Below are positions 10,105-64,000 of a stretch of 64,000 bases of DNA, in pieces. Position 1 is the first letter of the stretch, and each line of letters begins with the position of its first letter. The stretch is from positions 11,532,001 through 11,596,000 of the forward strand of contig OZ281501.1 of the NCBI GenBank assembly GCA_965637545.1, read 5' to 3'. Under the pieces are notes generated by a model that was not told the DNA's origin, did no database searches, and saw only the letters and a program-made list of their open reading frames with translations. Position numbers and translations under genes: made by a program. The stretch comes from Phallusia mammillata (Eukaryota).

Positions 10105-10731
10105 TGTTACGTCGTTTTCGCCAACTGTTGTGAACATAACTTTGCCCAGCAAAACGTATAACAATTGTCCTGTGACGCAACAGTTAGTGTTCCATTGCGT
10201 GACAATTAATGTTCTAATGCGTGACGTCAATTGCCTGTGTACTGTGTATGTTGCAATCATTTGTAACTTGCCTCGTGGTGTACGTTTGTAAACTGCTGAC
10301 AGGCATAATTTGAATTGAAGCCATCAATCTAAACTTTGATACCTTTATTTAGCAGCTAGAAAGTATAAATAAATTGCTGAGTTGATAAAGCTGCATTTGT
10401 GAATCATTTTGCTGGTAAGTTTGGCTTTGTACTGTAATGTGAAGTTTTGTTCTAAAACTGTAAATGTTTGGTTATTTGTGCAGGATTTGTTCGGCCTTTA
10501 AAACATCATTAAATACCAAAACCCCTGTGGCCAAACAGTCGGTATGTTTACTTGTTGTGTTTCGAGTGCGATTTGTGCTTTATACGTTTTCGTTTTCATT
10601 CGCAGAAAAACCGGAATTGACCATACCATTAAAACGAATTGTCGTTCCTTTATGGTGTCCGCGTTTTTTATTGAGCCACATTGTGTGACGTTTTCGTGAA
10701 AACAGGGGAACACGCGACAGAAAACGTTACA
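10105..10731 (+). repeat. 5' LTR
   Basis: TG...CA ends; TATAAATA at 10364; ATTAAA at 10508. I found no differences from the 3' LTR by eye, and the ORF-track translations of both copies are identical at a constant 6487-bp offset. Confidence 0.95.
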
Positions 10732-10790
10732 TAAAAGTTTTTCGACTGGCCGACTGTCAATTGTCTAGTACCAACGCAATCACGACGAAG

Positions 10791-25900: not shown

Positions 25901-28351
25901 ATGACGACAACTTGGTGATCAACACAACCGTTCTTGCTGCATTTGGATGCGCCGCTACAGTTGATGTGAATAGAGTTTCTTGTGTTACAAGTAGAGAATA
26001 CGGGGATTTGGTTCAGGACGGAATTTAGATTAGGAAAAGACGAATCTGTTTATGTTTTTTTTTAATCCTACCCGTATCATTTGGAGCTAAACCTTGCAAC
26101 GACCACGTGAACTTCGCCAGGTTATAAGTTAATAATTAATCCCCATTCCGACAAGCAAATGCATGATAGCGGCGCTTAAAAGTTGCCACCGTATGTTTTC
26201 TTGTAAACTTTCAGGTTCCAAATTACAAGCCTTGATTTTGTATATCGCAGATCGCAAGTGCTATTTGTAACGGCCAGGGCGATTTTACGTGCGGAATTTG
26301 TATTTGTGATGCCGGTTGGACGGGCGCGGCCTGTGCTCAACGAACCGTGGCAATTGGATGCGTTCAACCTGGTTCGCTCGACAAATGCTCAGGTCTGTAC
26401 ATTGCTTCACTGGATGAACTTTAGTCAGATTGTATTCGTTTATTCCATCCAGTGTATAAAACGTAATGCCCTTAGAATCCTATACAATAACAAAGAAATT
26501 TAAAAATGTTGTCACAAATTTTCTTCCAATGCCTTTTCTCCTAAGTCTTGTTTTAAACAATGTGACTTTATCTGCCCAGACCATTTTATATGACTGTGAT
26601 ATATCCATCGCCATACTTTATTTTTAAAAAAATCTAAAAGCCCTAGTGAAGCTGATATTTATAAATTGTTCCGACAAATCCCGCCAAATTGGCCACTGTG
26701 GATTCCAGATTATCAGTTGATCCAACTTATTGTGTGTTTGTTTGTGCAGGGAGGGGCCGGTGCTTAAGTGACCAGTGCCAGTGCAACCAGGGCTACCAGC
26801 ACGGGAAGTCGAAAATCTACGGCGATTTCTGCCAGTGCGACGAGTGTCCAAAGCAAGCCGGATTACTTTGCTCCGGCAACGGAATGTGAGTTTTGTTTGT
26901 TTCACTTTCTCGAGCAACGCAAACGCTAATCGGCTTATGGCTGTGATTGAATTGGATAAACGAGCTTGGTGAAATGTAAACAAACTAAAAGAGATTTTTA
27001 AGACCTACACGGTGTGTAATGCAGCGTCTCTGGTTCTGCCATTAAAAAATCAACTTATAAACGTTGAATTTTGATCAAACTGCTATAAAACTTTTGTTTG
27101 TTTTTTATATCTAATTGTCTTATAATGTCCTATCAGTTCAGTTTAATGACATGGGCGTTACCAGTTATGTGGGTTCAGTAAACACAAGAAAATGATATGG
27201 ACTTACATTATACAGCAAAACTTTAACAATTACGACTATAGTACGGGAAAAATTAAAACGAAACTTGGTAACTCTTCAAGTTAAACGACAAAATGTTTTA
27301 CAATAAAAATATATTCGTTGTTTTTGTAGCTCAAATAGCATTAGTGAACTCAGATTTTTAGAGTTTCTTTTATTTTCGCAGAGCAACAAAAGTGGGCCCT
27401 GAATCTTGTTCGTGTGAATGCGTCTGCAATCCTGATTGGACCGGAAGCGACTGTGGTTGTTCTCAACGGAACGACTCCTGTATAGGACTCGACGGATTAG
27501 TTTGCTCCGGTAACGGACGTTGCGAATGCGGAACCTGTGTGTGCACCCCTGGTTCGAAATTCGGAGGTCCGACGTGTGGAGACTGTATTACGGTGAGCTA
27601 TGTTTAAGTAAACCCTGTATCTATCTGTAACTGCTACACATTAATCAATTGTTGTCAAAATATGGATAAATGTACATGTTTAGTCGTCACTCGTCACCAA
27701 AAAATCTGTTTATCCTACTGTGAAAACAATTTATTTTCGTAACTTTTTGTAGATATTGTTGTGGTTTAAATGCTGAATAACAAACTTATGCTTTACTTAA
27801 GCATTTGATAAACTGACTACCACTATTTGTAGGATTGTCCATCCTGTGCCGAGTTCCAAAACTGCATCCAGTGTATCATGCACGGCAGTGGCCCCTACAA
27901 CCAAACTTGCGAAATCAACTGTCCGAAATATTCGGTAAAGCCGGTCGACACCAACTCAATGAGCGAAGGTAAAATATGTCATTTCAAAAATGTGTAGGCG
28001 GGTATCAAATATTTTTTAAACATGCGCGACACCAATGACTCATATGTGACTTATCTGGGGATCGTGCGGTTGGATTTCGACTTGATGCATCACTTTTAAG
28101 GTGGTCGACCATAATGTGAAACGGAAATACCAAAGAAAATGATTTAGCTTAACTGTATATTGTTGTATTACGATGTGTAAAATTATTATAGCTTGTTGAA
28201 ACTTGTGGCGTGTTATGTTTTGTAGAAACCATAAAGCCGGAAAATGGAGAGGTTCTGTGTGCGGCTATTGACGAGAGCGACAATTGCAAGTTCTACTATT
28301 CATACCAAGTTAAACCGGGCGGGATTGAGTATCATGCCGAGGAAGATAAAC
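19928..28351 (+). CDS. Integrin beta ectodomain exons (15)
   Basis: Exons 19928-20021, 21091-21272, 22292-22426, 22631-22778, 23224-23332, 23911-24231, 24558-24675, 24823-24925, 25346-25482, 25807-25965, 26251-26392, 26750-26885, 27382-27592, 27833-27968, 28226-28351. Motifs: PSI [51 protein letters not shown], QDYPT, and Cys-rich CSGNGRCECGTCVC. Confidence 0.95.
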
Positions 28352-31300
28352 GTAAGACATACCTTCATGAAAAAATAAACATACTTTTTGTACACCTGCA
28401 TACCAAAAACTTAGGTCAACATTTGTATGTAACGTAACTTTTACACCCCTGTATGTTACTAAATCATTTTTTCTTTGGTCGTAGGATGTAAGCCCGCTTA
28501 CTCTCTGCTTATCATCTTGTGGTGTATTCTCCTCTTTCTTCTTATCGGACTCATCCTTCTCTGCTGCTGGAGGTGTTGTGTATACGTCATCGACAAGGAG
28601 GAAGCGAAAAATTACAAACTTAGCAGTTTAGCTCAATACACTACTCCAGCTATGATTCCACTTATTCCTGCTATCGGTGCAAGTAAGCAAATAAAACATC
28701 TACTAGTGTCAATCAACTTTTTGAAATTTCACTTCCACGTAAATAAGCTAAAATTATTGCTTATCTAAAAGGCTGAAATTTAATGTCAAAACAATCAAAT
28801 CATTTTTTTACGCAATATTTTTGACAATAGATTCTTTTTTGAATAAACATCCATGTTTTATGTACGTTTACTTATACGAAATTGGTTCGGACACCCAAAA
28901 AGCTTTCGATTCCTTTATTTAATTTCAGGTAGCGTGATTGAATTCATCAAGGCAAAGTACCTCGTAAGACGAAGTGCGAAAGTAGCGGTGATTCCAGTAA
29001 GAAGATCGTTCGTTAAGGGAGGCTCGAAAGTTCTGTGGCGAACTTATCCTGGTAAGAGTTTGCATGCAAACATTTAACGAACCTGTAGCACCCTGAAAAA
29101 CATAAACAACCTCTCATTGTCAGGTTCCTCACAAGATGACGATTTTGAAGTGCTAAGTCAAGGGGAAGAAGGAACGATGGTGCGAAAGAGACAAACAGTC
29201 GAAAGGTAAGACTCTCGATTTTGTTACAGAATTTTGAACGTGGCGAGTTTATTGAGAACCACCAACCGTACGAAAATTCTGTTGTTAGACGCAAACCGAA
29301 GAAATTTGTATTGTAGCCAACGGCGGTTCATTGATGTTAAATTGAAAAACGGTTAACACTTGGCTTTCTAGTCCCACACTTTTTCATTATGACATAGTTC
29401 TTTAATTTACTGTTTATTTACATTTTGTGTCATCAAAACCACTTGCTTGCTTAGTTTTATAATCTTGCATTTCTTGAACATACATCATGTATTTTGAACA
29501 AGAAGCGTTTTTGTTGTGTAGCTTTGAACTTGAATGATTAGTAACAAAATATGGCTTTTTACACAGATTTAAACAATGTTTTCACACAAAACTTAATAAT
29601 GTTTACACATACTGACATAAGTGCTTAGCCTTAATTCGTTTAAACGACCTCCAACATAATGCTGATCCTGTCTTTATTTAGGCTTGTGGTGCAAGGTAAA
29701 AATGGTGAAAGTACAATCGAAGTGGAAGTTGTTGATGGTGGTGAGCGAAGTGCAGCGGCCAACGCTGGTTCGGGAGGTGGTGGAATGAATGGACAACATC
29801 AATCTCTTGCGTCCACTGCAAAGTTTGAGACAGTCAATGAAACAGCACCACTACTTGGAAATGGTTCGGCCGGTTTAGACTGGGGTGAAGGAGAAATTAA
29901 GTAAGTGTACGATTTCATAACAAAGATTTGACACAATTGTAAAGGTCTAGGGATGTTTATCATTTTCTTTTAGCGGATCGTTTAAAAACACAAATGGAAC
30001 ATAGTCACATTTTGACGCTTAACTATATTCTAGTGGAATAAGTCTCATTGTTTTTGACCATCTTCCTGATAGAAACTGATATGTTTGTTGTATTTTGAAT
30101 TTTAGCTTTGACGATGAAAACGAGTTCACCAACATTGAAATACCTCTTCTACACGATTTTTCTGGAAAGGAAATTTCGTTTTGGGTGGAACTCCATGGAC
30201 AGGAACGAGGAGTAGCGCTCGGCCTCAAGAGAACCAAAGTTGTTGTTATCAAAGACGAAGGTTTGTCTCATACAATTTTATCCGTACCCTTGGTTTGAAA
30301 TAAAACGTATTTAATCTTTACACAGAGGCTGGAATTATTGGTTTCCCCAAACCCAGTTACGTGTTCAAGGAAAACGACGGATTTGCTGTCATTCCAATTC
30401 ATCGTACTGTCGGAATGGACGGTCACGTGAGCGTCACTTGGTTCACACGCGACATCACTGGTATCAGTGGCAAACATTATATTGGAGGAAGGGGCGTCGT
30501 CGAGTTTGGAGACGGAGAGGTAAAGATCGAATCTTTTTCATCAAATTTTTTAAAGAAGGATGCTTTTTAAACATTGAACAAAACAAGCCTCACCAAATTT
30601 AACAACCGATTCTTAGTGTGTCTCTGTAACTTGAAGTGTTTTCCTGTTTTTTAATACAGGTCACACAACACGTCCAAGTTGAACTGATTCCTGACATCTT
30701 GTATGACGACAGTGAAAAGGCTTTCAATATAATGTTGGATGAGCCCAAGGGTGGCGCTTCGCTCGATCTCAGTCATTGCATGGTTACTGTGCTGGGAGAT
30801 GAGGAATGTTCGCTCGTTCAATTCCCCAAGGACGCGTATCCATTCATGGGTAATTAGCGCTGTGATGTAAGATGCATGCCGGTTGGCGAAGTAACTGTGT
30901 CTCCTTCGCTAATTAAGTTGTCAATTTATATGCTGGATGTTATTGCCATCAAGCTAAACTGTTTACGAATAGCTAATAAGCTGATTGCATTCACAATGAA
31001 ATTGGGTGAAAGAAAAAAATCAAAAAAAATTACATAGAGCAACTTTAAACACGAAATGACGCTTGGATTGGAGCTATGACTTTAGCACCCTGTGTGGCCT
31101 TGGCCGGTCTTCAAATTGGCAGGTTTAGGTTTTAACACTTGTGGCCCACCGTCCTACACCCACCAATCACGTGACGTCACTACGAAGTTGTATGATTACC
31201 AACAATAGTGGTATAACTGTGATATGTGCGCGGGGTTTATATCCAACTGCTATGGTGCTAAAGGGAAATTTAAGTTCACCTAAGTTAAATAACTTTTTTC

Positions 31301-49300: not shown

Positions 49301-52300
49301 TTGTTATGGTATATCACTTTTGCAAAAATGATCAGAAACTCAATAAATATATTCACTAACTCACATTTTTAGATGTTTCTAAGAGGGATTTATTCTCGTT
49401 GCTACTAAATATGAAACAAAAAATGTTGCTAACATCAATTTACACATAAAATTTTTACACATAATTTGTTTTCCTTTAGAGTTGCGACTTTCGTATCAGA
49501 GTCCGGTACAAGCCAAGACAAGTCAAAAAACGAGCGAGTTTGTTCTTAAACGTAACATCAAAGAATTCAAGGACGTAGTCACGTGGAAAATTGTAAAAGA
49601 GATTCGTCGTCGCAGAAAAACTGCAAGTTCCACATCATCCAGTCAATCCAGCTCCTCAAGGTAAATAAACAACTTATAAACAACTTGTAATCGAATATAC
49701 AGTAAAAAAATAAATTATCTAAATTTTTGATAAAATTGCCGGATACGTTGGTTTGTATAATGTTAATGTATGAATATTTAGATTTATAAACAAAACTTTT
49801 CTGTTAAGTTCGTCGGATAGTAGCGATGCCTCAGAAGAACCTTTGGTCGTGAGCAGCGGTGAACTTCAATACGAGCCTGGAAACGACGTCGCCACTTTGC
49901 AGTTCCCACTTAAACAAGACATGCGTCATTCGTCACAAGTCTATCGTATATTGGTCAGAAAAAAGCCACGTGACGGCGTCAGCGAGGAGGAACTTGAACG
50001 CGAGCGCCCCCTAGCGACAGTTGAACTAAACGTTGTCAATGATACCGGTTTGTAAATTTGTTAATAATGATGAAAAGTAGTTCGTTCCTGTTTTCAACTA
50101 GTTTTTACCAATACGTATTTGAAAAAGGTTATCCAGGCCGGGTTCGCAAACCGTTTGCTGCCTCAATGAACCCACATGAATGTACAGTGTCTTGGGAACC
50201 ACCAGCGCTTGGTGGACCAGTGGAAGGTTACAAAGTTATTGCTAAATCAGATGGTAAGTAATCAAGGTTAAATCCGAAGCTTTATTTGCTTGTTTGCTTG
50301 TAACGAAATAACTGTATGAAAATGTCTTTGTGTAATAAGTGTGAAAAGTTTGGCATTTTGTATTGCAGATGCGGACGATGTTGAAGAAACTGTTGGACCC
50401 GATGAAAGGAAAGTTACTCTTACTGCTTTGAAACCATCCACTAAATATCGTGTATACGTTCAACCGTTTAATAAGATCGGATATGCCCAGCCATCGTCCA
50501 CAGCACATGCTATTACACAAGATGGTACGAAACAAACGTTTTTTATTTATTTTCCGGGCTATACTGTAAATTTTATCTAACTTTTGAGTTTGGAACTGTA
50601 TAGTGTAGATGTTTATTGATGTAATGATGTTTGGTTCCCAAGTCAGTCAGCCTATTTTCATCACATAGAAATGAAAGTGGAGTTTTCCGAGCGTTTCTAC
50701 TCGTTCAAGACCAGTGACAAGGTTGCAGTGATTCCTATCAAACGTCACTTTACACGAGGTTATGCTACTTTGCATTGGAATGTTCGTTGGTGTAAGCGCA
50801 GTGACGCATCTGATGTTTCGTCATCATCCTCATCCGATTCTGAATCTGAATCCGAAGTAAGTAATGTCTTGCAATTTCTTTTTAATTGTTGCCAGAATCT
50901 CAGCACTTTTACTTTAAACGTTATGTTGGACACAGCTATTGTGTATTGTGGCTTTAAGTACACCGTTGAATCTCCTTATAAATATAAACTATAAAAAAAC
51001 TAGATGAATGAAATAGCAAAATTGTTTTAAAGAATAAGTCAATGAAGATAATTGAAGAATATATACATTTTGTCTAAATTCCATCTTCAGTTCTTATAAA
51101 TGAAAGCAATACGATAAAACATGTAATAAAGTAAATGAAACGCAACAGAGTGAAGTTTAGACTTTTATAAAAATACACTTGTTTTGAAACCATGGTTTAG
51201 CATAAATGGCGATTTGTTAACGTTTATCCCTTTCAGGTTCGTGGTCGGGATTGGGCTTCAGGATCAATCACATTCCAGGATGGAGTGGACAAGGCTGAGG
51301 TTCGAATTCCTTTGCAGCAAGCAACACCTGCTCCTGTGCCACGAAAGAGATCATTCTTCTGGCTCTACGTGGTCGATCCCAATAAAAAGAAGAGACTTGC
51401 TGCAATGAGATGCAAACTCGTTGATGACAAGGGTATATGTCATAGAATAATTAGCTAAAAGCATTATTAAAATATTAGTTACTATCTATTATCAAGGTTG
51501 GTTTTGATTTCCGTGTAACCCATTGGTCATTTACAGCTTATGGGTCTGTTGGTTTTGCAAATGATCTGGTCAGCCTCCAGGGCGATCACGATGTCCCTGA
51601 CATTCTTCTCTTGCCATTGTCACGTGATAACGGCTCAGAGGGTCACGTGATCGTGACGTGGGAGGCTAGCGTTGCCGATGCCGCCGATTATCTGTTGTCG
51701 ACCGATTCGTCGGTCGGCACTGTGGCGTTTGTAGATGGTGATACTGAGGCCTCTGTTGTGTTGCGTCTTAACCCGTCGTGGGTTGATGACTTCCAATCAC
51801 GTGATCCTGTTGACGTAAATGTGGAGTTGACGTCAGCAGAGAGGGGAGCTGAGTTGGTTGATGAACGTCGATCTTGCAAAGTTAAATTGTTTCCCGGTGA
51901 GGGTCGAATTAGCCATCTTGTTGGGATTCGTTGGTTATCTTCTTTAGATGCATCTTGTTCTCTTCTGGGATGGAATCTCCATCTCACAACAAACACACTA
52001 AACACATTCATCGTCGATTGTTTTACCAACATTACCCTACTGCATGGCACTTGTCCGTAACCGATTTGCGTTGGTCTAAGTTGTAGACCATTAAATCAAA
52101 ATAATCAATTATTTTTTCCCAAACTCACATCACACACAATCAACTACACACCAAAAACTTACTGGTCTGTCAATACCAAACAACCCTTGCGAGCAAATAA
52201 CGAACCTAATCGTTCCACAACCATTTTCTACGTTACAGGCATTGTATAACCAATAACTACTTACATGCGTAACACTTCCGTGTAGCGAAGTGCGCCGGTT

Positions 52301-55300
52301 TGTCCAACCTAATTGGTCGAATGTTATGCGAGTGGCATGAACTTTCAACTCTACCTCTTAGACGTAAACAAGGTAATGTTGCATGTACTTTCAAATTTAT
52401 GTGAACCAAATTGAGTGAGACAATTAGGTTGTTGTGTAGGCAATTAACGAAAATTAACCTTTGCACGATAACCAGTGATGAAAAACCTACATAGCGTCTG
52501 CTGTTAAATAGAACTGCATTAGTATTTTTTGTACTTTTTTCACCCAACTTTAAAACAGTAGACTTAAAACCGACTGTTTTGTTTCAGCGGAAAGAGGAGT
52601 GATATCTGTGTTACCCCAAACAAGGCAAATCAAATGGCCAGTTGATACAATTGAATTTGAAATTCTGAGAGAGAATGGAAGTTATGGGCCAATGCGCGTA
52701 GCTTGGTCGATAGGTGACAGTGCTAGTTGCAGCTCATCCAGCTCGTCCAGTTCGTCCAGCTCCTCAAGTGATTCGAGTGATGACGGTGAAAGTCTTTCCC
52801 GTTATTTTCAACAAATTTCGGGCGACGTCTGGTTTGCTAACAACGAAAATTCACGAAAGTTTGATGTTTCCACACACCCGGATGTCATGTTGGAAGAAGA
52901 CACGTTTGCATGTCTTTCGATTGCTCCTATGACACCTGGTGTTGCTTTGAAGGATGGTGGAGTAATCTCAACTTTAACTTTGATGCCTGAGAGGGGTTGC
53001 GTGGCAGTGGAACCTGTAAATGCTGATATAAGTTGGCCACCGCCAGACAATTCAATCGAGTTTAATGTAAAACGTAACCTTGGAACTTGCGGTCGAGCGT
53101 ACTTGCAGTGGGACCTCAAGCAAAACGAGCCAAGTGACAGTGATTCTGGTGAGTTGTTTCAACAGACTACTGGCGACATCCATCTTGCGAACGGGGAATC
53201 AGAACGTTTCTTTAGGATACCGGTATCCACTGACGTGTACGGACCACGCAAGGACTCCAGCTACTCTTTGAATATCACGCCAATCACACCAGAGCTAACT
53301 GTAGATCCAAGCTCGGAAAGCGTTCAGTTTACCATGCTTGAACGTGTACCTCCGGGCACAATATCGTTCGAACGCAGACATGTCGACTGTAAAACTGAAA
53401 ATGTGTCGCAAATTGAGATACCGGTAGTACGCGAAAATGGCACTGGTGGAAAAGTCACTGCTGAATACTTTACACGAGACGAAACTGCGTCGGCTGGGGT
53501 TGAATATGAAGAAGATTTAGCGCAAGGGGTGGTCTCATTTGATGACGGCCAATCCCAAAGCAGCATAGTGCTAAACCTAGTCCAAGGTGCCAAGTACAGA
53601 AAACCAAAGAAGCTTTTGATTGAACTTGGGCTGACATCTGGTGATGCTGAACTTGGTACTTTGTATGAAACAGAGGTGATGTTACTTCCGACCTACGTTG
53701 AGCCTCCAGGCGTAATTGGCTTCGAAAGTGATGACGACGTGCAGTTGTGCGTGAATGACTCCCAAAACTTGGAAGTTATCGTAGACAGAAGCGAAGGTGT
53801 TGAAGGCGACGTCGGTGTTCTCTGCATTATTAAGAGCGAAAGCTCGGAAGAGGCGGAAAAACACTTTGCAAGCCTTGAAAAAGAGATAGCATTTGCCGAT
53901 GGCGAAACAAAGTGCGAAGTAAACATTGACTTGCTAAAGGAGCGTTACCGAAAGTCTTTACATTTTTCGATCGTCTTGGCCAAACCAAAGGGTGGTGCAA
54001 AACTTGGAAAACGCACTGAAAAGAGGCTAACGTTGTTACCAACGTACGTTGAACCGCCCGGAAAATTTACCATCCCTAAACTTGAACATCAGAAGTTCAG
54101 CACCTGTGCCACATACAAAAGCACATACCAGATAACGTTGGACAGAACGGGTGGTGTCGGGGGAGATGTAGCTGTAAATTACAGAACTGAAGATGGGACA
54201 GCCGTTGAAGGAAAACATTACAAAGGAAGCAGTGGCGTGTTAAACGTAAAAGATGGGGAAAAGAATGGTACATGCGACATAGAGTTGTTACCTTGCGAAT
54301 ATCGCGAAGAGTTGTTTTTCTATGTCTATGTTGAAAAACCACAAGGTGGCGCTGAACTTGGCGAAGAGAAGCAAATGAAGATCACGCTACTACCGACAGA
54401 TACAGAACCACCTGGAGTGCTTCATTTGCCACAAGAGTCCGTCAAAGCTGATTCCAACGAGTCGGAAATCATTAAAATACCAATTTCCAGAACCAATGGA
54501 GTTGGTGGTGAAGTAACAGTACGCGTTAAAACGATTGACGACAGTGCAAAGGACGATGTTCATTACAAAGGTATTGACGGGACAGTTACTCTCAAAGATC
54601 GCCAGGACCATGTCGACTTGCCAATTTCTTTGCTTCCAGCTGTTTACAGAAAAGAGCTCAAGTTTTATATTGAGATTGGAAATGCATCTGGAGGAGCAGA
54701 TGTTGAGAACAACAAGCTAACCATCGTTCTGCTTCCTACAGACACGGAACCAGAGGGAGTGATTGCGTTGCCGAACGACGCAGAAGTTAAAGTAGATGCA
54801 AATGAAGATAAAATGGCTAAGATACCAATAAAGCGAGTTAATGGTGTCGGTGGTGAAAAGATTTTGAAATACAAAACAAGCGATGGGAGTGCCAAAGCTG
54901 GAATCCACTACGAGTCTGCGGAAGGCGATATTACACTCAAAGATCGTCAAGCTGACGAAAATATCGAGATAAGGCTGCTGCCAGCAATGTACAGGGACAC
55001 ATTGGCTTTTAGCGTACTCATTGAAGATCCAAGTCAGGAGACAGAAGTTACTGCACCAGTCAAGCTGTTGCCAACTGACACCGAACCGCCTGGTAAACTT
55101 ACTTTACCTGATTGTGACGACCTTGTTTCCAATGCTAATGATGATAACGTCGTAAAAATTCCTGTGAGGCGAGTTAAAGGTGCAGGTGGTGAAGTTTCTG
55201 TTGCAATCAAAACACACGATGATACCGCATTGGATGGAGTCCACTATGTAGGCATAGATGGAAGGGTGACTTTGAAGGACAGACAAACTGAAGCTGAAAT

Positions 55301-58300
55301 ACCAGTGCAACTCATATCTACCATGTACAGAAATCCACTGAAATTTACTGTTGAAATCAGCGATCCCTCAGATGGAGCAGATCTCGGAAACAATCCCCAT
55401 AGTCACGTGACTTTACAGCCTACTGATGAAGAACCAGAGGGAAGGCTGACTTTTATATCGGAGTCTGGCCAACCAAGTACTGAAGTGAATGCGAATGATT
55501 GCGAAACTGTCACGATCGATGTTGGGCGAATGGACGGAGTTGGTGGAGACAAAACTGTGCATTTTAGAACAAAAGAGGGTTCTGCAAAAGACGGAAAACA
55601 TTTCAAGGGATGCGAGGGAACCTTAGTTTTGAAAGATCGTGAATCGAAAGGAAGCATTTTCATTCCTCTTCTACCTGAAGTTTATCGCGATACATTATTA
55701 TTTGACGTTGAAATTCACGACCCTAGTGCACCTACCGATAAAGTAACAACCACGATTAAACTTTTACCCACAGACAATGAACCCGAAGGTGAGATTTCGA
55801 TACCAGATGATGCTGGAGTTGAAGTAGATGCAACAAAAGACAAATCAGTGATGATTCCCGTGAAAAGAGTTAATGGTGTCGGTGGTGAAAAGATTTTGAA
55901 ATACAAAACAAGCGATGGCAGTGCTAAAGCTGGAATTCACTACGAGTCTGCGGAAGGCGATATTAGATTGAAAGATCGCCAAGCAGATGATAATGTGAAA
56001 ATTAAGCTGCTGCCAGCAATGTACAGAGATACATTGGACTTTAATGTAATCATTGAAGACCCAAGTCAGCAGACAGAAGTTACTGCACCAGTCAAGCTGT
56101 TGCCAACTGACACCGAACCGCCTGGTAAGCTTACTTTACCTGATTGTAATGATCTTGTTTCCAATGCCAATGATGTTGACGTCATAAAAATTCCTGTGAG
56201 GCGAGTTGAAGGTGCAGGAGGTGAAGTTTCTGTTGCAGTCAAAACACACGATGATACCGCATTGGATGGAGTCCACTATGTAGGCATAGATGGTAGAGTG
56301 ACTTTGAAGGACAGACAAACTGAAGCTGAAATACCAGTGAAGCTCCTATCTACCATGTACAGAAACCCACTAAAATTTACTGTTGAAATCAGCGATCCCT
56401 CAGATGGAGCTGATCTCGGAAACAATCCACATACTCACGTGACTTTACAGCCTACTGATGAAGAACCAGAGGGAAGGCTGACTTTTATATCGGAGTCTGG
56501 CCAACCAAGTACTGAAGTGAATGCGAATGATTGCGAAACTGTCACGATCGATGTTGGGCGAATGGACGGAGTTGGTGGAGACAAAACTGTGCATTTTAAA
56601 ACAATAGAGGGTTCTGCGAAAGACGGAAAACATTTCAAGGGATGCGAGGGAACCTTAGTTTTGAAAGATCGTGAATCGAAAGGAAGCATTTCAATTCCTC
56701 TTTTACCTCAAATTTTCCGCGATACATTGACATTTGACGTTGAAATTCACGACCCTAGTGGACCTACCGATAAAGCAACCACAACTATTAAACTTTTACC
56801 CACAGACAATGAACCCGAAGGTGAGATTTCGGCACCAGATGATGCTGGAGTTGAAGTAGATGCAACAAAAGATAAATTAGTGATGATTCCAGTGAAAAGA
56901 GTTCATGGTGTCGGTGGTGAAAAAAATTTGAAATACAAAACAAGCGATGGCAGTGCCAAAGCTGGAATCCACTACGAGTCTGTTGAAGGCGATATTATTC
57001 TCAAAGATCGTCAAGCTGACGAAAATATCGAGATAAGGCTGCTGCCAGCAATGTACAGGGACACATTGGCTTTTAGCGTAATCATTGAAGATCCAAGTCA
57101 GCAGACAGAATTTACTACACCAGTCAAGCTGTTGCCAACTGACACCGAACCGCCTGGTAAACTTACTTTACCAGATTGTGACGATCTTGTTTCCAATGCT
57201 AATGATGAAAACGTCGTAAAAATTCCTGTGAGGCGAGTTGAAGGTGCAGGTGGTGAAGTTTCTGTTGCAATCAAAACACACGATGATACCGCATTGGATG
57301 GAGTCCACTATAAAGGCATAAATGGAAGGGTGACTTTGAAGGACAGACAAACCGAAACTGAAATACCAGTGCAGCTTCTGTCTTCCATGTACAGAAATCC
57401 ACTGAAATTTACTGTTGAAATCAGCGATCCCTCAGATGGAGCTGATCTCGGAAACAATCCACATACTCACGTGACTTTACAGCCTACTGATGAAGAACCA
57501 GAGGGAAGGCTGACTTTTATATCGGAGTCTGGCCAACCAAGTACTGAAGTGAATGCGAATGATTGCGAAACTGTCACGATCGATGTTGGGCGAATGGACG
57601 GAGTTGGTGGAGACAAAACTGTGCATTTTAGAACAAAAGAGGGTTCTGCAAAAGACGGAAAACATTTCAAGGGATGCGAGGGAACCTTAGTTTTGAAAGA
57701 TCGTGAATCGAAAGGAAGCATTTTCATTCCTCTTCTACCTGAAGTTTATCGCGATACATTATCATTTGACGTTGAAATTCACGACCCTAGTGCACCTACC
57801 GATAAAGCAACGACAACGATTAAACTTTTACCCACAGACAATGAACCCGAAGGTGAGATTTCGATACCAGATGATGCTGGAGTTGAAGTAGTGGCAACAA
57901 AAGACAAATCAGTGATGATTCCAGTGAAAAGAGTTCATGGTGTCGGTGGTGAAAAGATTTTAAAATTTAAAACCAGCAATGGGAGTGCTAAAGCTGGAAT
58001 TCACTACGAGTCTGCGGAAGGCGATATTAGATTGAAAGATCGCCAAGCAGATGATAATGTGAAAATTAAGCTGCTGCCAGCAATGTACAGAGATACATTG
58101 GACTTTATTGTAATCATTGAAGATCCAAGTCAGCAGACAGAATTTACTACACCAGTCAAGCTGTTGCCAACTGACACCGAACCGCCTGGTAAGCTTACTT
58201 TACCTGATTGTGACGATCTTGTTTCCAATGCTAATGATGATAACGTCGCAAAAATTCCTGTGAGGCGAGTTGAAGGTGCAGGAGGTGAAGTTTCTGTTGC

Positions 58301-61300
58301 AATCAAAACACACGATGATACCGCACTGGATGGAGTCCACTATAAAGGCATAGATGGAAGGGTGACTTTGAAGGACAGACAAACTGAAGCTGAAATACCA
58401 GTGCAGCTTCTGTCTACCATGTACAGAAATCCATTGAAATTTGCTGTTGAAATCAGCGATCCCTCAGATGGAGCTGATCTCGGAAACAATCCCCATACTC
58501 ACGTGACTTTACAGCCTACTGATGAAGAACCAGAGGGAAGGCTGACTTTTATATCGGAGTCTGGCCAACCAAGTACTGAAGTGAATGCGAATGATTGCGA
58601 AACTGTCACGATCGATGTTGGGCGAATGGACGGAGTTGGTGGAGACAAAACTGTGCATTTTAGAACAAAAGAGGGTTCTGCAAAAGACGGAAAACATTTC
58701 AAGGGATGCGAGGGAACCTTAGTTTTGAAAGATCGTGAATCGAAAGGAAGCATTTTCATTCCTCTTTTACCTCAAATTTTCCGCGATACATTGACATTTG
58801 ACGTTGAAATTCACGACCCTAGTGCACCTACCGATAAAGCAACCACAACTATTAAGCTTTTACCTACAGACAATGAACCCGAAGGTGAGATTTCGGCACC
58901 AGATGACGTTGGAGTTGAAGTAGATGCAACAAAAGATAAATCAGTGATGATTCCAGTGAAAAGAGTTCATGGTGTCGGTGGTGAAAAGATTTTGAAATAT
59001 AAAACAAGCGATGGCAGTGCTAAAGCTGGAATCCACTACGAGTCTGCTGAAGGTGATATTACACTGAAAGATCGCCAAACTGATGGTGATGTGGAAGTAA
59101 AGCTGTTGCCGGCAACATACAGAGATACACTGGACTTTACTGTAACTCTTAAGGATCCTGGTCAAGACAAAGAAGTACCTTTTAGAGTAAAGCTTTTACC
59201 CACTGACTGTGAACCAGCTGGAAAGATGACAATGTCCGACGTGGTGCAAGTTAATGCCAATGACGTTGATGTCGCTATGGTTACTGTACAACGGGTCGGT
59301 GGAGTTGGTGGACAAGTATCTGTTGCAATAAAAACTGCTAATAATAGTGCTGTTGATGGCGTCCATTACAAGGGCATGGACGGCCGCGTAACATTAAAGG
59401 ACAGACAGCAGAATGTTAAATTGCCAATAGCCCTTGTCCAAGAAAGCTACCGAACACCACTCAAGTTTTATGTTATAATGGATGACCCAATCGGAGAGGC
59501 AGAAATTTCTGAAGACAATAAATGCACGGTGACACTTTTACCAACGGATACAGAACCACAAGGATTTTTAGGATTTTTAGACAGGCAAAGTGAAGAAATT
59601 TCGGTCAACGCCAACGAGATTGGACGCCTTGAAATCCCAGTGAAAAGGTACTCTGGCATCGGAGGAACTGTAACGGCGTCGTACAACACCATCGATGGGT
59701 CGGCAAAAGCTGGAAAACACTACTTGCCGGTTTCGGGAACTTTAACTTTTGGAGATCGTCAAGACAGCGACGAAATATCGATAACTTTGTTACCAGAAAC
59801 GTATCGCAACGAGCTTGACTTTGAACTTGAAATACAGTCTAGTGACGACAAGAAAACATCAAACATGAAAATACTTCTAGCACCAACTGACACCGAAACA
59901 CCAGGCGAACTGACCTTGCCTGACAATGATGTACTTGAAGTTAGTGCCAAGAATTGCAACAGTCTTGGAATTCCGATAAGACGCAAGAACGGGGCAGGTG
60001 GCGAAGTTTCCTTCCGTGTGCGAACCATAGACGGAACAGCTCAGGACGGAAAACACTACAGAGGGATCAACCGTCAAATTACCCTCAAAGACCGTGAAGA
60101 GTTTGTTGAGGTAGAAGTCCCTCTACTCCCACTCCTTTACCGCGACAAACTCGACCTGGTTGTGGAAATTGACCAACCACAGGGCGGGGCTACCCTCGGT
60201 GACGTCAGCAAGTCAACTGTGACGTTTTTGCCGACTGACGACGAGCCAGCTGGGAACTTGACTTGGCCCGGGTTAGACAATGACGATACAGTTACGTGCG
60301 ATGGAAGCACTGTCAAACACGTCGTTGTGCCGATTAGACGCGTTAATGGTAAGGGCGGGCCTATCTCAATCTCATACCGCACTAGGGATGATACCGCAAA
60401 AGCAGATGAACATTACGTACCGACTTCTGGCAACTTGACTATTGGTGACAGGAAAACTGAAGGCGAAATACGCATTCCAATAAAACCTAAAATGTACAGA
60501 AGCGAGTTGAAGTTTTTCCTGGAGATTGGCCGGCCTGACGGCGGAAAAAGCGAAGTACAAATTGTCCTGCAGCCAACTGATAAGGAACCGAGGGGCGAGG
60601 TCGTGTTTAAAGCAGATAAGGATCTGGTCAAAACGAATGCAAATGAAGCGGACAGTGTCGATATTAATTTGGCAAGGATTGGTGGCGTTGGCGGAGAAAT
60701 GCATCTCCATGTTAAGACTGAGGACGGAAGTGCAAAGAGAGATAAGCATTATACCAGCGTTGAGAGAAATTTTGTGATCAAAGATCGCGAACAGGAAGCT
60801 CAAATCAAAGTTCCATTGCTCAAAGAAATGTACAACGACCCCAAGTCCTTCTACGTGGTATTGACCGATCAACACACACAAAAATCAACTAAAATGACCG
60901 TCATGCTCTTTCCTACTTACATTGAACCTCCTGGTGAGATTACATTCGAAACCGATAAAATAAAACTCGGTGAACCTGAAGATAGAAAGGTGATTATTCC
61001 TCTCAAACGCGAAAATGGATGTGGTGGCAAAGTTGGAATGAGCTATGAAACAATACCAGGTAGCGCAAAAGCAGGAGTGCATTTTGAACCTGCGTCTGAA
61101 GTGCTTGAACTTGAAGATGGGGCAAAGGATTGTGCAGTTGAGATAAAACTTCTTAATGCAAAGTATAGAAGCGAACTGGACTTTCATGTCAGACTCTTTG
61201 ATCCTGTGGGTGGGATACAACTTAAGCAATCTGATATTGAAATCAAACTTCCTCCTACAGACACAGAACCGACTGGTAAATTGTTTTTTGATTCTCCAGA

Positions 61301-63931
61301 TGGCGGTCTAAGCTTTGATACCGATGATTCAAAAGTCCTGAAAATTCCGTTAATACGCAAGGGTGGCTGCGGCGGTGACGTTTATATTGATTACGCCACG
61401 GCTGACGGTACGGCCACAAGCGGAGAACATTACGTTGCCACGTCGGGAAAGGCCGTTGTTGGCGATAGGGAGACGAAAGGACACATTGAAATTGATACCG
61501 TAGCATGCAAAAGAATTGAAGAGAAGTTTTTCACTATCCTCCTAACTGACCCTGAAAATAATCGTTCAGAGCAAGTCCAAGTCACATTGCAGCCCAATGA
61601 AGAACCGACAAGCTATGAATTTGACTGTAAACTGTCTAAAATAAAGGCTTGTGTCCTGGATGACGATGTCGTACGTATACCCATACGCAGAAGCAGCGAC
61701 AAATGTCAAAACTCAATTCCCCTGTCGTACAAAACAAAACCGGGATCTGCCAAACCCGACAAGCACTACACTACTAGCAAGGGCTTGGCGCAAATTCCAG
61801 AGGACTCAGACCAATGCACTATTGAGATCCCTCTTAAGAAATCGGTATACAGGCGTTCTGTGAACTTTTTTGTACATGTGAGAAATCAGATGGGTATAAT
61901 TTACGTTGTTGAGGTTGTTCTTAGTGCCACAAAGGAGGATCCACCTGGAATACTTGAGTTTTCATCACCCAATTTCACTTTCCCTGCCTTCACTGGCACA
62001 TCAGGAAACCCACAGATTTCAATCCCTATAATGCGCATGTTCGGTTCAGGTGGCGAAGTGTGCGTGGACTACTTTACCCGAGACAACACAGCTATCAACG
62101 GCAAACATTACGAGGAATCAAGCGGACAAGTTACCTTTGAAGACGGACAGACTGTTAAGGATATTGATATCAAACTGCTGCCATACAATCAGTACACAAA
62201 AGATCTGTCTTTCGTTATTGAACTTGGCTTAGCAAGTGGAGGGGCTGAAGTTGAAGGAAACTATGAGACAGAGGTTGAGCTTCGTGCTCCTCTTGACGAA
62301 AACGATCCCGGGATGCTTGGATTCGAATCCACACGGACTGTCATCTCTTCAACGCGTCTACAACAGAAGAAGAATAAACCAGTGAAAATTGAGATTCCGG
62401 TTCGTCGGACGATCGGTTGTCGTGGAGCAGTTGCTGTCGATTTTTTCACTCGTGACAATACAGCAGTCTCGGGGCAGCATTACGTTGAAACACAAGGCGA
62501 ATTGCCGTTTGCTGCTGGTGAAATCCGCAAAAGCATTAAAGTCGATCTATTGCCGGGTTCTCACTACAAAAAGCAATGCTCATTTACTGCCGAGCTCGGG
62601 GCCGCTACCGGTGATGCTGAAGTGGGTTTGTACGAAACAGAGGTGGTTTTAAACCCGCTGAGAAGGAGATCATCTGCAAGCAGTTCCAGCAGTTCGTCAA
62701 GCTCATCTAGCAGTTCATCCAGTTCGTCCGACGAAGATGTGTTTCGGTCATCGCACACAGAAATTGTGAGACGGGAGATTGGAAGTACTGCTGTGATGAC
62801 TGAACATAGTGAAATAAAAACTGTTACATTCACAACTTACCAGACTCAAACAACTTACGAGACCAGCATACACCGCCATCAAGAATTCGAAGGTAAATCT
62901 AATTTTTCACACACTCTGTTTTAATTGTGTTTTTGCATTATGGGTACATAAAGTTACCTTGTGTATTGCGGGTTTTGGAAGGCCTGTGTAAATTACTTAA
63001 TTGATTTTTCAACCAAAGTGAAGCTTAACACAGAAAATGGTCAACCTCTTTGAGTATGAAATGTATTAAGTAATTATAAGTAACAACACTATGTTCTAAT
63101 GTGAGCCAAATGGATAAAGTCGACTTTTTGTAGTAAATGTATTAAGACTATTGTTAAATCAAACTGTCAGATTTTAAGCTTCTCTAAATGAATTGAAATA
63201 ACAATAACTTTTTCTCTTTCACAGATGATGGAACAGCTGGTGAAATCGGATTTCCAGACGAGCATTATGAATTTGAACTTGGTGTTGGCACCGAAGCTGT
63301 GGTGCCGGTTGCTCGTACTTTTGGTCTGACCGGAGAAGTCACTGTTGATTGGTTTACTCGGGAAAACACAGCGGTTGCTGGTAGAGACTTTATTGAGTCC
63401 GAGGGGCAGATTACCTTCGCTCATGGTCAGCCTTCTGCGGAGATCAAGGTCCCGTTAGTAGATCCACGAAAAACCGCAGGCGAAAAATTCACTGATCGGA
63501 GTTTTATCGTTGAGTTGGGCGAACCTGATGGGGGCGCAACTATGGCTCGCTACGAGACTAACGTAGTGATTTATGGCCCCCAAGGTGATTCCTCGGCCAG
63601 AAAAGGTTGGTTATATCAAACAAAATTGTAAAAAAGTGCACAGAAAGAATTAGCTCACACTTTGTTTACAAAATATACACAAAGAAAATATCATAAAAAC
63701 CATCGTACCAATACTCAATAATATGCTGGCAGTTAATCATTTTAGTCACAAAGTCTTCGTTTTTTTGCAATTTTAGCGTCTGGCGAGGATTCGAGCCCAG
63801 GTGAACACTTGTAGCGCCGCTTTGCTTTGGAAAATGCAATTTTTAAAATAAAAAACATAAAAAACATTGCATTTTCGTTAATTCGATTTTGTTTCACAGG
63901 CAAACATCGAGCTTCGTCCAGTCGAAAATAA
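19928..63931 (+). CDS. ITGB4: Giant integrin beta4-like subunit (~7,520 aa, 75 exons): signal peptide, PSI, hybrid, betaI, I-EGF, beta-tail, TM, then about 54 Calx-beta and 2 FN3 cytoplasmic domains
   Basis: Manual exon chaining in which splice phases match throughout (GT-AG except one or two GC-AG introns). Summed CDS is 22,566 nt = 7,522 codons ending TAA at 63929-63931. The symbol reflects similarity to beta4; orthology is untested. Confidence 0.8.
28485..28682 (+). CDS. Transmembrane and juxtamembrane exon
   Basis: YSLLIILWCILLFLLIGLILLCCWRCCVYVIDKEE; ends at the donor A|GTAAGC, phase 1, matching the next acceptor at 28929. Confidence 0.92.
28929..48791 (+). CDS. Multi-exon cytoplasmic array of about 21 Calx-beta domains
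   Basis: 46 small exons (57-297 nt) repeatedly encoding G.(I/V).F...(Y/F)......IPV.R..G..G...V.W.T.D.TA..G..Y....G...F.DG.....I.IP. Domain boundaries usually fall at phase-1 introns. Confidence 0.88.
33472..33705. mobile_element. hAT MITE (234 bp) in an integrin intron
   Basis: TIRs CAGGGGTCGGCAA / TTGCCGACCACTG; perfect TSD gtttaaat. Confidence 0.92.
42595..42807. mobile_element. hAT MITE of the same family as 33472-33705, opposite orientation
   Basis: Ends CAGTGGTCGGCAA / TTGCCGACCCCTG; shared gcggaccgg motifs inverted; TSD gtttatac / gtttacac. Confidence 0.88.
45973..47689 (+). mobile_element. Internally deleted Buster/Charlie (ZBED5-like) hAT transposon in an intron
   Basis: TIRs CAGTGATTCTCAAA / TTTGAGAACCACTG; TSD ttctaaac / ctcttaac (6/8). 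Remnants: BED finger (CIVC...RHLKQNH), PLSNNTI, LQVDESTD, FLSDLFDKLNNLNSSLQG, CEYGFSAL; several stops and frameshifts. Confidence 0.88.
48929..49270 (+). CDS. Fibronectin type III domain 1 (two exons: 48929-49089, 49150-49270)
   Basis: TW.P.....PVEGYKVTYW ... LDDLQPNTSYQVNVRPFNNVGDG. Confidence 0.88.
50128..50524 (+). CDS. Fibronectin type III domain 2 (two exons: 50128-50253, 50369-50524)
   Basis: VSWEPP..GGPVEGYKV ... LTALKPSTKYRVYVQPFNKIGY. Confidence 0.88.
52588..62892 (+). CDS. Giant 10,305-nt internal exon: 29 Calx-beta domains plus a Ser/Thr-rich linker
   Basis: Acceptor tttcag|CG at 52587/8 and donor AG|GTAAAT at 62892/3; open in one frame (ORF track 3441 aa); phase 1 at both ends. 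Confidence 0.9.
54747..59210 (+). repeat. Coding tandem array: 1,032-bp (344-aa, three-domain A-B-C) unit, about 4.3 copies
   Basis: Near-identical units; shadow ORFs recur at 55413, 56445, 57477 and 58509 (exact 1032-bp step). Confidence 0.95.
63225..63931 (+). CDS. Terminal exons: last Calx-beta (63225-63584), 24-nt micro-exon (63777-63800), stop exon (63900-63931)
   Basis: All phase 1 with AG/GT boundaries; predicted end ...ASGEDSSPGKHRASSSRK*. ATTAAA at 63995-64000 could be the poly(A) signal. Confidence 0.6.
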
Positions 63932-64000
63932 CCTTTGTATTACTAACTGTGTGCTTTGTAAATAACCTAGAAAAGCTACATACTTTACTTTACCATTAAA

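What the first reader, a model, noticed from the sequence alone, without database searches (positions are those of the whole stretch)
52588..62892. 10.3-kb frame-symmetric exon: a skippable cassette that could nearly halve the protein
Seen: all other exons are 24-360 nt, but this one is 10,305 nt (3 x 3435), phase 1 at both ends. Skipping it (51896 to 63225) keeps the frame and removes 29 domains, about 7,520 to about 4,090 aa. Established: giant alternatively spliced exons set scaffold length in ankyrins and titin. Inference: tissue-specific long and short isoforms tuning linker length.
Basis: partly seen in the sequence, partly recalled or inferred. Interest (0 to 1): 0.75.

Follow-up and report, generated by a model that had tools for sequence, protein, structure and literature searches.

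The report
Giant optional exon in integrin tail
A real, transcribed 10.3-kb exon encoding about 29 Calx-beta domains sits in the cytoplasmic tail of a sea-squirt beta4-like integrin gene and is optional, but it is left out together with its three neighbouring exons by a junction other than the one proposed.

Summary
Observation confirmed. Window 52588-62892 is one open, AG/GT-bounded exon of 10,305 nt with phase 1 at both ends. It encodes 27-29 Calx-beta domains. No other stop-free stretch in the gene exceeds 579 nt.

The gene is the ascidian orthologue of integrin beta4 (Ciona Ci_beta5), with a huge cytoplasmic Calx-beta rod.

RNA contigs from two independent studies show three things:
- The exon is in mRNA and spliced 62892->63225.
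- A second contig joins donor 51432 directly to a fibronectin-III exon at 64536, in frame. This removes four exons: 51537-51896, the giant exon, 63225-63605 and 63900-.
- Giant-exon transcripts run into a stop about 10 codons after exon 63225-63605, either spliced to 63900 or read through.

The proposed junction 51896->63225 was not seen.

The same branch point is annotated in Ciona intestinalis and Styela clava isoforms. In Styela the optional block is only 419 aa. An unnamed related ascidian has a 6,660-nt, phase 1-1 giant exon. The exon therefore grew by lineage-specific tandem duplication inside a conserved optional block.

Long and short isoforms exist. Here they look like alternative C-terminal modules rather than a simple cassette. 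Tissue specificity is untested.

The parts
51237..51432 (+). Branch exon (196 nt). It is the last exon shared by both isoforms. Its phase-1 donor 51432|GT is used with either acceptor 51537 (inferred) or acceptor 64536 (seen in RNA).
   Evidence: The loose-end 30-mer of the high-depth RNA contigs in X1 and X7 maps uniquely to 51402-51431. Sequence. It is homologous to Ciona residues 3662-3721, 62% identity.
51537..51896 (+). First exon of the optional block: 360 nt, phase 1-1, one divergent Calx-beta-like domain.
   Evidence: Sequence. Own-HMM hit E 3.4e-05. Aligns to the Ciona X1-X3-specific tail. No Pfam hit at E<=0.01. Its use in RNA was not tested here.
52588..62892 (+). Giant exon: 10,305 nt, phase 1-1, 27-29 Calx-beta domains.
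   Evidence: RNA contigs cover 59226-62892 without internal joints and splice 62892->63225 in X1 and X7. RNA-like runs hold 0.55-0.68 of the sampled words of 53600-63599.
54735..59195 (+). Tandem array of a 1,032-nt three-domain unit inside the giant exon: four full copies plus the start of a fifth.
   Evidence: spacing 1032 x4. Copies 1-4 are 91-96% identical with dN/dS 0.22-0.35.
52730..52762 (+). Serine-run (acidic/serine low-complexity tract) near the exon's 5' end. A similar tract lies near its 3' end, at roughly 62680-62750.
63225..63605 (+). Third exon of the optional block: 381 nt, phase 1-1, one Calx-beta domain.
   Evidence: RNA joints 62892->63225 (X1, X7) and 63605->63900 (X1). Pfam Calx-beta E 2.8e-12.
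63900..64000 (+). Apparent terminal exon of the long form. It encodes G-KHRASSSRK, then stop TAA at 63929-63931. Transcribed sequence continues past the window's end to at least 64357 in X7.
   Evidence: If donor 63605 is read through, as in X7, the stop is TAA at 63629-63631.

Best explanation
The giant exon is the core of an optional four-exon block (51537-51896, 52588-62892, 63225-63605, 63900-) in the cytoplasmic tail of an ascidian integrin beta4 orthologue.

The choice is made at one phase-1 donor, 51432. Splicing to the far acceptor at 64536 (a 13.1-kb intron, 536 nt beyond the window) gives a short form of about 4,200 aa, in which the Calx-beta rod is followed by a fibronectin-III pair and the C-terminal tail. 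Splicing to the near acceptor at 51537 adds about 31 Calx-beta domains (about 3,680 aa). In this species that form then terminates about 10 codons after the last of them, giving a long form of about 7,400 aa that lacks the fibronectin-III tail.

The block is ancestral to ascidians. Its middle exon was inflated by lineage-specific tandem duplication within the exon, from about 0.75 kb in Styela to 6.7 kb in a related species and 10.3 kb here.

Shown: exon anatomy, transcription, junctions 62892->63225, 63605->63900 and 51432->64536, the stops, and conservation of the branch point.

Inferred: junctions 51432->51537 and 51896->52588 (from the Ciona models only), that the long mRNA starts at the integrin promoter, protein lengths, and any role as a length or partner switch.
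For: inclusion: in X1 (study P1) and X7 (study P3) the 62893-63224 intron has zero depth and is joined out, so these runs are RNA. Contigs tile 59226-62892 with no internal joint.

exclusion: a separate contig in each run starts at L002 4935 with 30 foreign letters. These map uniquely to window 51402-51431. The sites are GT/AG and both phase 1.

long-form end: the X1 contig goes 63605->63900 and meets TAA at 63929-63931. The X7 contig reads through 63605 to TAA at 63629-63631 and continues to 64357 at the same depth as the exon.

other species: Ciona intestinalis X1 (4059 aa) and X4 (3838 aa) share 3,736 residues, ending ..LLDDRA. Then X1-X3 enter the Calx block and X4 enters the fibronectin-III exon. 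Styela clava X1 (4613 aa) and X4 (4194 aa) differ by a 419-aa, three-Calx insert between the homologous donor and acceptor.

the orthologous locus L004 has the same exon order and a 6,660-nt, phase 1-1 giant exon.

the homologous Styela exon is about 755 nt.

array copies are under purifying selection (dN/dS 0.22-0.35), and the expansions are species-specific.

the upstream exons are collinear with the Ciona integrin-beta ectodomain, and Ewan et al. 2005 (PMC1145181) place that Ciona gene with beta4.
Against: All the RNA evidence is assembled contigs, which drop rare variants and cannot give ratios. The depth contrast (about 89-93 against 9-12) is only a hint.

The 5' junctions of the block (51432->51537, 51896->52588) were not observed, because the single read-laying run covered only 59601-65600.

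No poly(A) signal or transcript end was established for the proposed terminal exon.

In Styela the annotated long form rejoins the fibronectin-III exons. An in-frame 63605->64536 join is possible here too and cannot be excluded.

The Ciona and Styela isoforms are automatic NCBI predictions, and I did not check the RNA behind them.
Confidence: 0.62

Rival explanations
1. One reading: the giant exon alone is a skippable cassette, joined out as 51896->63225, and the long form keeps the common C-terminus.
For: Both sites are phase 1, so the join would be in frame. Contigs cannot exclude rare junctions.
Against: No contig and no loose end at 63225 points to any upstream partner other than 62892 in X1 or X7. 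The exclusion junction actually seen is 51432->64536. The Ciona and Styela isoforms branch at the homologue of 51432, not of 51896.
Confidence: 0.08
2. Internal cassette of three exons. The long form is 51432->51537...63605->64536 and keeps the fibronectin-III tail, as annotated in Styela. The 63900 exon and the read-through are minor or unproductive by-products.
For: Styela clava X1 rejoins the same fibronectin-III acceptor after its 419-aa block. A 63605->64536 join would be in frame.
Against: In both runs the contig that leaves the giant exon passes the 63605 donor into stop-containing sequence (63900 exon in X1, read-through in X7). Its depth there equals that of the exon. No branch towards 64536 was reported.
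Confidence: 0.22
3. The giant exon is constitutive. The 51432->64536 contig is an assembly chimera.
For: Assembled contigs can be chimeric at repeats.
Against: The same junction, with the same 30 letters, occurs in runs from two independent studies. It uses canonical GT/AG sites, keeps the frame, and matches the annotated Ciona X4 and Styela X4 junctions.
Confidence: 0.03
4. The block is a separate transcription unit. A transcript starting at an internal promoter or a trans-spliced leader acceptor near 51537 or 52588 would encode a free cytoplasmic Calx-beta rod not attached to the integrin.
For: The 5' junctions were not observed here. The giant-exon contigs differ in depth from the integrin contig and have their own stop. 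Ascidians use spliced-leader trans-splicing widely (my own knowledge).
Against: The Ciona X1-X3 models join the integrin exons to the block through the homologous junctions. The exon borders are phase 1, like the upstream domain borders, and no start-codon context was found.
Confidence: 0.07

Closest known systems
Giant alternatively included exons of ankyrin-G and ankyrin-B (480/440-kDa isoforms), and differentially spliced titin segments
   Same: One exon is tens of times longer than its neighbours. It is frame-symmetric, optional, and roughly doubles the size of a scaffold protein built of repeats or extended sequence.
   Different: Here the exon is excluded together with three neighbours through one distal acceptor. 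The long form appears to end right after the block instead of rejoining the common C-terminus. The exon is made of folded Calx-beta domains and grew by recent tandem duplication. Tissue specificity is unknown.
Vertebrate integrin beta4 (ITGB4) and its Ciona orthologue Ci_beta5 (Ewan et al. 2005, PMC1145181)
   Same: An integrin-beta ectodomain and transmembrane segment are followed by a long cytoplasmic tail holding Calx-beta and fibronectin-III domains. PDB beta4 Calx-beta entries are among the sequence hits.
   Different: Vertebrate beta4 has one Calx-beta domain and a tail of about 1,000 residues. This gene has about 25 Calx-beta domains in the common part and about 31 more in the optional block. 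The 2005 paper could not define the Ciona tail.
NCBI predicted isoforms: Ciona intestinalis 'G-protein coupled receptor 98-like' X1-X4 (XP_018671880-2, XP_026695066) and Styela clava LOC120348632 X1-X4
   Same: They are orthologues, collinear exon by exon, with isoforms that branch at the homologous donor and use the homologous fibronectin-III acceptor.
   Different: The Styela optional block is 419 aa in three small exons. The Ciona models stop about 320 aa into the block, so they do not show its size. Neither is described in the papers I could search.
Calx-beta domains of Na+/Ca2+ exchangers (CBD1/CBD2; PDB 3rb7, 3us9)
   Same: Same domain family by Pfam and by sequence match to solved structures.
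   Different: In the alignment to 3rb7, the exchanger's acidic loop ..IDDDVFEEDE.. is replaced by ..LLPAMYRDT.. in the array domains. Ca2+ binding at that site is therefore unlikely (inference).

Membership tests
Alternatively spliced giant exon (ankyrin/titin type) | A single exon far longer than all others in the gene, open and bounded by canonical splice sites | tested here: met
   10,305 nt against at most 579 nt of stop-free sequence elsewhere in the gene.
Alternatively spliced giant exon (ankyrin/titin type) | mRNAs that include the exon exist | tested here: met
   RNA contigs tile 59226-62892 and splice 62892->63225 in two studies. Word shares are 0.55-0.68.
Alternatively spliced giant exon (ankyrin/titin type) | mRNAs of the same gene that lack the exon exist and stay in frame | tested here: met
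   51432->64536 in X1 and X7, phase 1 on both sides. Four exons are removed, not one.
Alternatively spliced giant exon (ankyrin/titin type) | The long form rejoins the common downstream exons (true internal cassette) | tested here: inconclusive
   Contigs leave exon 63225-63605 into stop-containing sequence in both runs, and no 63605->64536 join was seen. Contigs cannot show absence. The Styela annotation does rejoin.
Alternatively spliced giant exon (ankyrin/titin type) | Tissue- or stage-specific inclusion | not testable with these tools
   Run identities are coded and only contigs are held. Both forms co-occur in X1 and X7, and X11 and X13 show neither.
Integrin beta4 orthologue group (Ci_beta5) | Integrin-beta ectodomain (PSI, beta-I, I-EGF) and a transmembrane segment upstream in the same gene | tested here: met
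   Window exons 21102-29188 are collinear with residues 26-870 of the Ciona protein. That protein's residues 1-900 carry Integrin_beta, PSI_integrin and I-EGF.
Integrin beta4 orthologue group (Ci_beta5) | Long cytoplasmic tail with Calx-beta followed by fibronectin-III domains | tested here: met
Integrin beta4 orthologue group (Ci_beta5) | Groups with vertebrate beta4 in a phylogeny | not tested
   Taken from Ewan et al. 2005 for the Ciona gene. No tree was built here.
Calx-beta domain (PF03160) | Significant match to the family profile | tested here: met
   E 1.5e-251, 26 stretches.

The most novel reading that the evidence does not exclude
An integrin switches its cytoplasmic output by a single splice choice. 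One form has a rod of about 25 Calx-beta domains ending in a beta4-like fibronectin-III adaptor module. The other has a rod of about 56 domains, more than 100 nm longer if extended, with no such module. The optional exon is an evolutionarily expandable ruler whose length differs more than ten-fold between ascidian lineages (0.75, 6.7 and 10.3 kb). This would be a new way of tuning how deep into the cell an adhesion receptor reaches.
Probability: 0.3. Interest if true: 0.75.

Novelty: new member of a known kind. Interest (0 to 1): 0.55.

Why it matters
Integrin beta4 is the only integrin with a long cytoplasmic tail, and that tail links epithelia to intermediate filaments. Its closest invertebrate relative turns out to have a tail several times longer, and one conserved splice decision doubles or halves it.

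This gives three testable things:
- A natural length series (419 aa, about 2,470 aa and about 3,680 aa of optional rod) for asking what such a rod measures or bridges.
- A clear case of an exon growing more than ten-fold by tandem duplication while staying optional and under purifying selection.
- A correction for annotation. The orthologues are currently named 'GPR98-like' or 'uncharacterized', and their long forms look truncated.

Tried and rejected
Protein word search, 5' part: searching the first 715 aa of the giant exon for transcript-derived proteins of this species, to see the 51896->52588 junction, gave only two distant bacterial-type hits. This species appears to be absent from, or withheld in, that collection.

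Protein word search, whole exon: this gave many bacterial and ADGRV1-type Calx-beta proteins that are not orthologues. P0004 (4,878 aa) lies beside a TadE gene on a bacterial contig and was dropped.

Conserved terminal exon: I looked for a conserved counterpart of the 63900 exon in the orthologous intron of L004 by sensitive blastn. Nothing alignable was found, so conservation of that stop-bearing exon is unknown.

Runs X11 and X13 gave no contigs on the stretch at all, so they say nothing about isoform choice.

Steps left out: I did not build or search any joined (spliced) sequence. Frames across junctions were worked out from coordinates and per-exon translations only. The large representative-protein search, structure prediction and fold searches were not used, because the protein family was not in doubt.

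Full report
**1. The observation**

The + strand is open from 52554 to 62921, the only long open stretch in this part of the window. The acceptor reads tttgtttcag|CGG at 52587|52588 and the donor reads TCGAAG|gtaaat at 62892|62893. The exon is 10,305 nt = 3 x 3435. Codons start at positions divisible by three, so both ends are phase 1.

Pfam finds 26 Calx-beta stretches, E 1.5e-251. An HMM built from the exon's own domains finds 27. The first ~250 residues align to two further degenerate domains of the Ciona orthologue. Elsewhere in the gene no stop-free stretch exceeds 579 nt, so the size contrast is real.

Frame symmetry carries little weight, though. Every boundary I could phase in this block is phase 1: donors 51432, 51896, 62892 and 63605, and acceptors 51537, 52588, 63225 and 64536.

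**2. What the gene is**

A Ciona intestinalis protein (XP_018671881, 4045 aa) is named 'G-protein coupled receptor 98-like'. It carries Integrin_beta, PSI_integrin, I-EGF, Calx-beta and fn3 domains. It is collinear with window exons from 21102 to 51431, at 45-90% identity per exon. Its sequence shows a transmembrane segment near residue 750, so everything after that is cytoplasmic.

Ewan et al. 2005 (PMC1145181) identified this Ciona gene (Ci_beta5) as the orthologue of vertebrate beta4. They could not define its tail and saw only short Calx-like ORFs downstream. The window's genome is 240 Mb. By these best matches it is an ascidian. I could not name the species.

**3. RNA evidence**

The one run search listed ten runs from three studies that hold 0.55-0.78 of the sampled words of 53600-63599. 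I laid X1 (study P1), X7 (P3), X11 (P4) and X13 (P5) on L002, which is window 59601-65600. All of these are assembled contigs, so they show presence, not absence or ratios.

- **X1 and X7 are RNA.** Intron 62893-63224 has zero depth and is joined out as GT..AG in both.
- **Inclusion.** Contigs tile 59226-62892 without any internal joint and splice 62892->63225.
- **Fate of the included form in X1.** The same contig splices 63605->63900. By the sequence, the split codon G|GC is followed by KHRASSSRK and TAA at 63929-63931.
- **Fate of the included form in X7.** The contig reads through donor 63605, meets TAA at 63629-63631, and transcribed sequence continues to 64357 at the same depth as the exon.
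- **Exclusion.** In both runs another contig (6,571 nt in X1) starts at L002 4935 with 30 letters that lie on nothing in L002. These letters occur once in the window, at 51402-51431. With the shared G resolved, the junction is donor 51432|GT to acceptor AG|64536. Both are phase 1. The protein reads ...CKLVDDK-A-RLVAPKNVSIDVSS..., the start of a fibronectin-III domain.
- **What is removed.** This junction removes exons 51537-51896, 52588-62892, 63225-63605 and 63900-.
- **Depth.** The exclusion contig has mean word depth 89-93, against 9-12 for the giant-exon contigs. The tool warns that contig depth cannot rank parts of a gene, so I take this only as a hint that the short form is the commoner one in these samples.
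No loose end at 63225 points to any upstream partner other than 62892, so 51896->63225 was not seen.
- **X11 and X13** have nothing on the stretch, including the fibronectin-III exons.

**4. Conservation of the splice choice**

In Ciona intestinalis, isoforms X1 (4059 aa) and X4 (3838 aa) share their first 3,736 residues, ending ...RCSLLDDRA. X1-X3 then continue into the homologue of exon 51537-51896 and the start of the giant exon (...LMP|AERGTISIK...; here ...LFP|AERGVISV...). X4 continues into the fibronectin-III exon.

In Styela clava, X1 (4613 aa) and X4 (4194 aa) differ by a 419-aa insert of three Calx-beta domains. The insert lies between ...CSLIDDK| and |ARITAPKNV..., which are the homologous donor and acceptor. 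There the long form does rejoin the tail. These are automatic NCBI models, and I did not check the RNA behind them.

**5. Evolution of the exon**

In the Styela locus (L006) the insert is coded by an exon of about 755 nt, a small linker exon and a 366-nt exon.

In L004, a 342-kb ENA contig from an unnamed related ascidian, the exon order is the same. The giant exon there is 6,660 nt, again phase 1-1, with at least 15-16 clear Calx-beta domains (about 18 by its length).

Domain by domain, the window's array domains are 81-98% identical to each other but at most 49% identical to any L004 domain. L004 has its own duplication of about 2.6 kb whose copies are 99-100% identical in protein. The inflation is therefore lineage-specific and recent.

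The window's array is four full copies of a 1,032-nt three-domain unit plus the start of a fifth. Copies 1-4 are 91-96% identical, with dN/dS 0.22-0.35, which fits a translated, constrained sequence.

**6. Mechanism (inferred)**

One donor (51432) chooses between a near acceptor (51537, 104-nt intron) and a far one (64536, 13.1-kb intron).

The far choice gives a beta4-like tail: a rod of about 25 Calx-beta domains, then a fibronectin-III pair and the C-terminal tail, about 4,200 aa in all. This figure is scaled from the Ciona branch point at residue 3,722-3,736 plus the 434-aa Styela tail.

The near choice adds about 31 Calx-beta domains (120 + 3,435 + 127 aa). On the contig evidence this form ends about 10 residues later, at about 7,400 aa, without the fibronectin-III module.

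In the alignment to the exchanger structure 3rb7, the acidic Ca2+-site loop ..IDDDVFEEDE.. is replaced by ..LLPAMYRDT... I therefore read these domains as structural spacers rather than Ca2+ sensors. That is inference.

If the domains are strung out at 4-5 nm each (my own estimate from exchanger domain dimensions), the block would add well over 100 nm.

**7. What remains open**

- The 5' junctions of the block were not seen in this genome.
- A 63605->64536 join would be in frame and cannot be excluded.
- No poly(A) site was established.
- Tissue specificity is untested.

I built and searched no joined sequence. All frames across junctions come from coordinates and per-exon translations.

**8. 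Novelty**

I found no paper on a giant exon or on isoforms of this ascidian integrin. The isoform branch is, however, already present in public automatic annotation for two other species. Optional giant exons are a known kind, as in ankyrins. I rate this a new member of that kind, with two twists: the alternative C-terminal module and the more than ten-fold lineage-specific growth.

Noticed in passing
window 10689-16484 (+): Upstream of the integrin gene lie two long open frames of 385 and 1,546 aa. They carry Pao/BEL retrotransposon peptidase, reverse transcriptase, integrase zinc-binding, DUF1759 and DUF5641 domains. This is an apparently intact Pao/BEL-type LTR retrotransposon in a GC-richer patch (0.44-0.48). 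Observed only.
   Followed up: partly
window 6709-7659 (+): A 317-aa open frame with a DUF4371 domain (E 6e-18), probably a transposase-related remnant.
   Followed up: no
L004 10670-15820 (unnamed related ascidian, ENA ERZ25067576): The orthologous giant exon holds its own duplication, with copies about 2,577 nt apart and six domains that are 99-100% identical in protein. It is either a very young expansion or an assembly artefact.
   Followed up: partly
window 63606-64357 (partly beyond the window; L002 4006-4757): Run X7 keeps this stretch unspliced, with a 9-nt and a 1-nt deletion relative to the assembly. Run X1 splices out 63606-63899. So there are two forms of the long isoform's 3' end in different studies. 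The X7 contig ends at 64357, immediately before a GT.
   Followed up: partly
window 52730-52790 and about 62680-62750: Serine runs followed by acidic residues sit at both ends of the giant exon. Similar Ser/Asp/Glu clusters occur between domains in the Ciona protein. They may be phosphorylation-prone linkers.
   Followed up: no
Ciona intestinalis XP_018671880-2 (P0046, P0005, P0048): The annotated long isoforms end ...LQLFPVTLVLG only about 320 aa into the optional block. The public Ciona models are probably truncated there, and the name 'GPR98-like' is misleading for an integrin beta chain.
   Followed up: no
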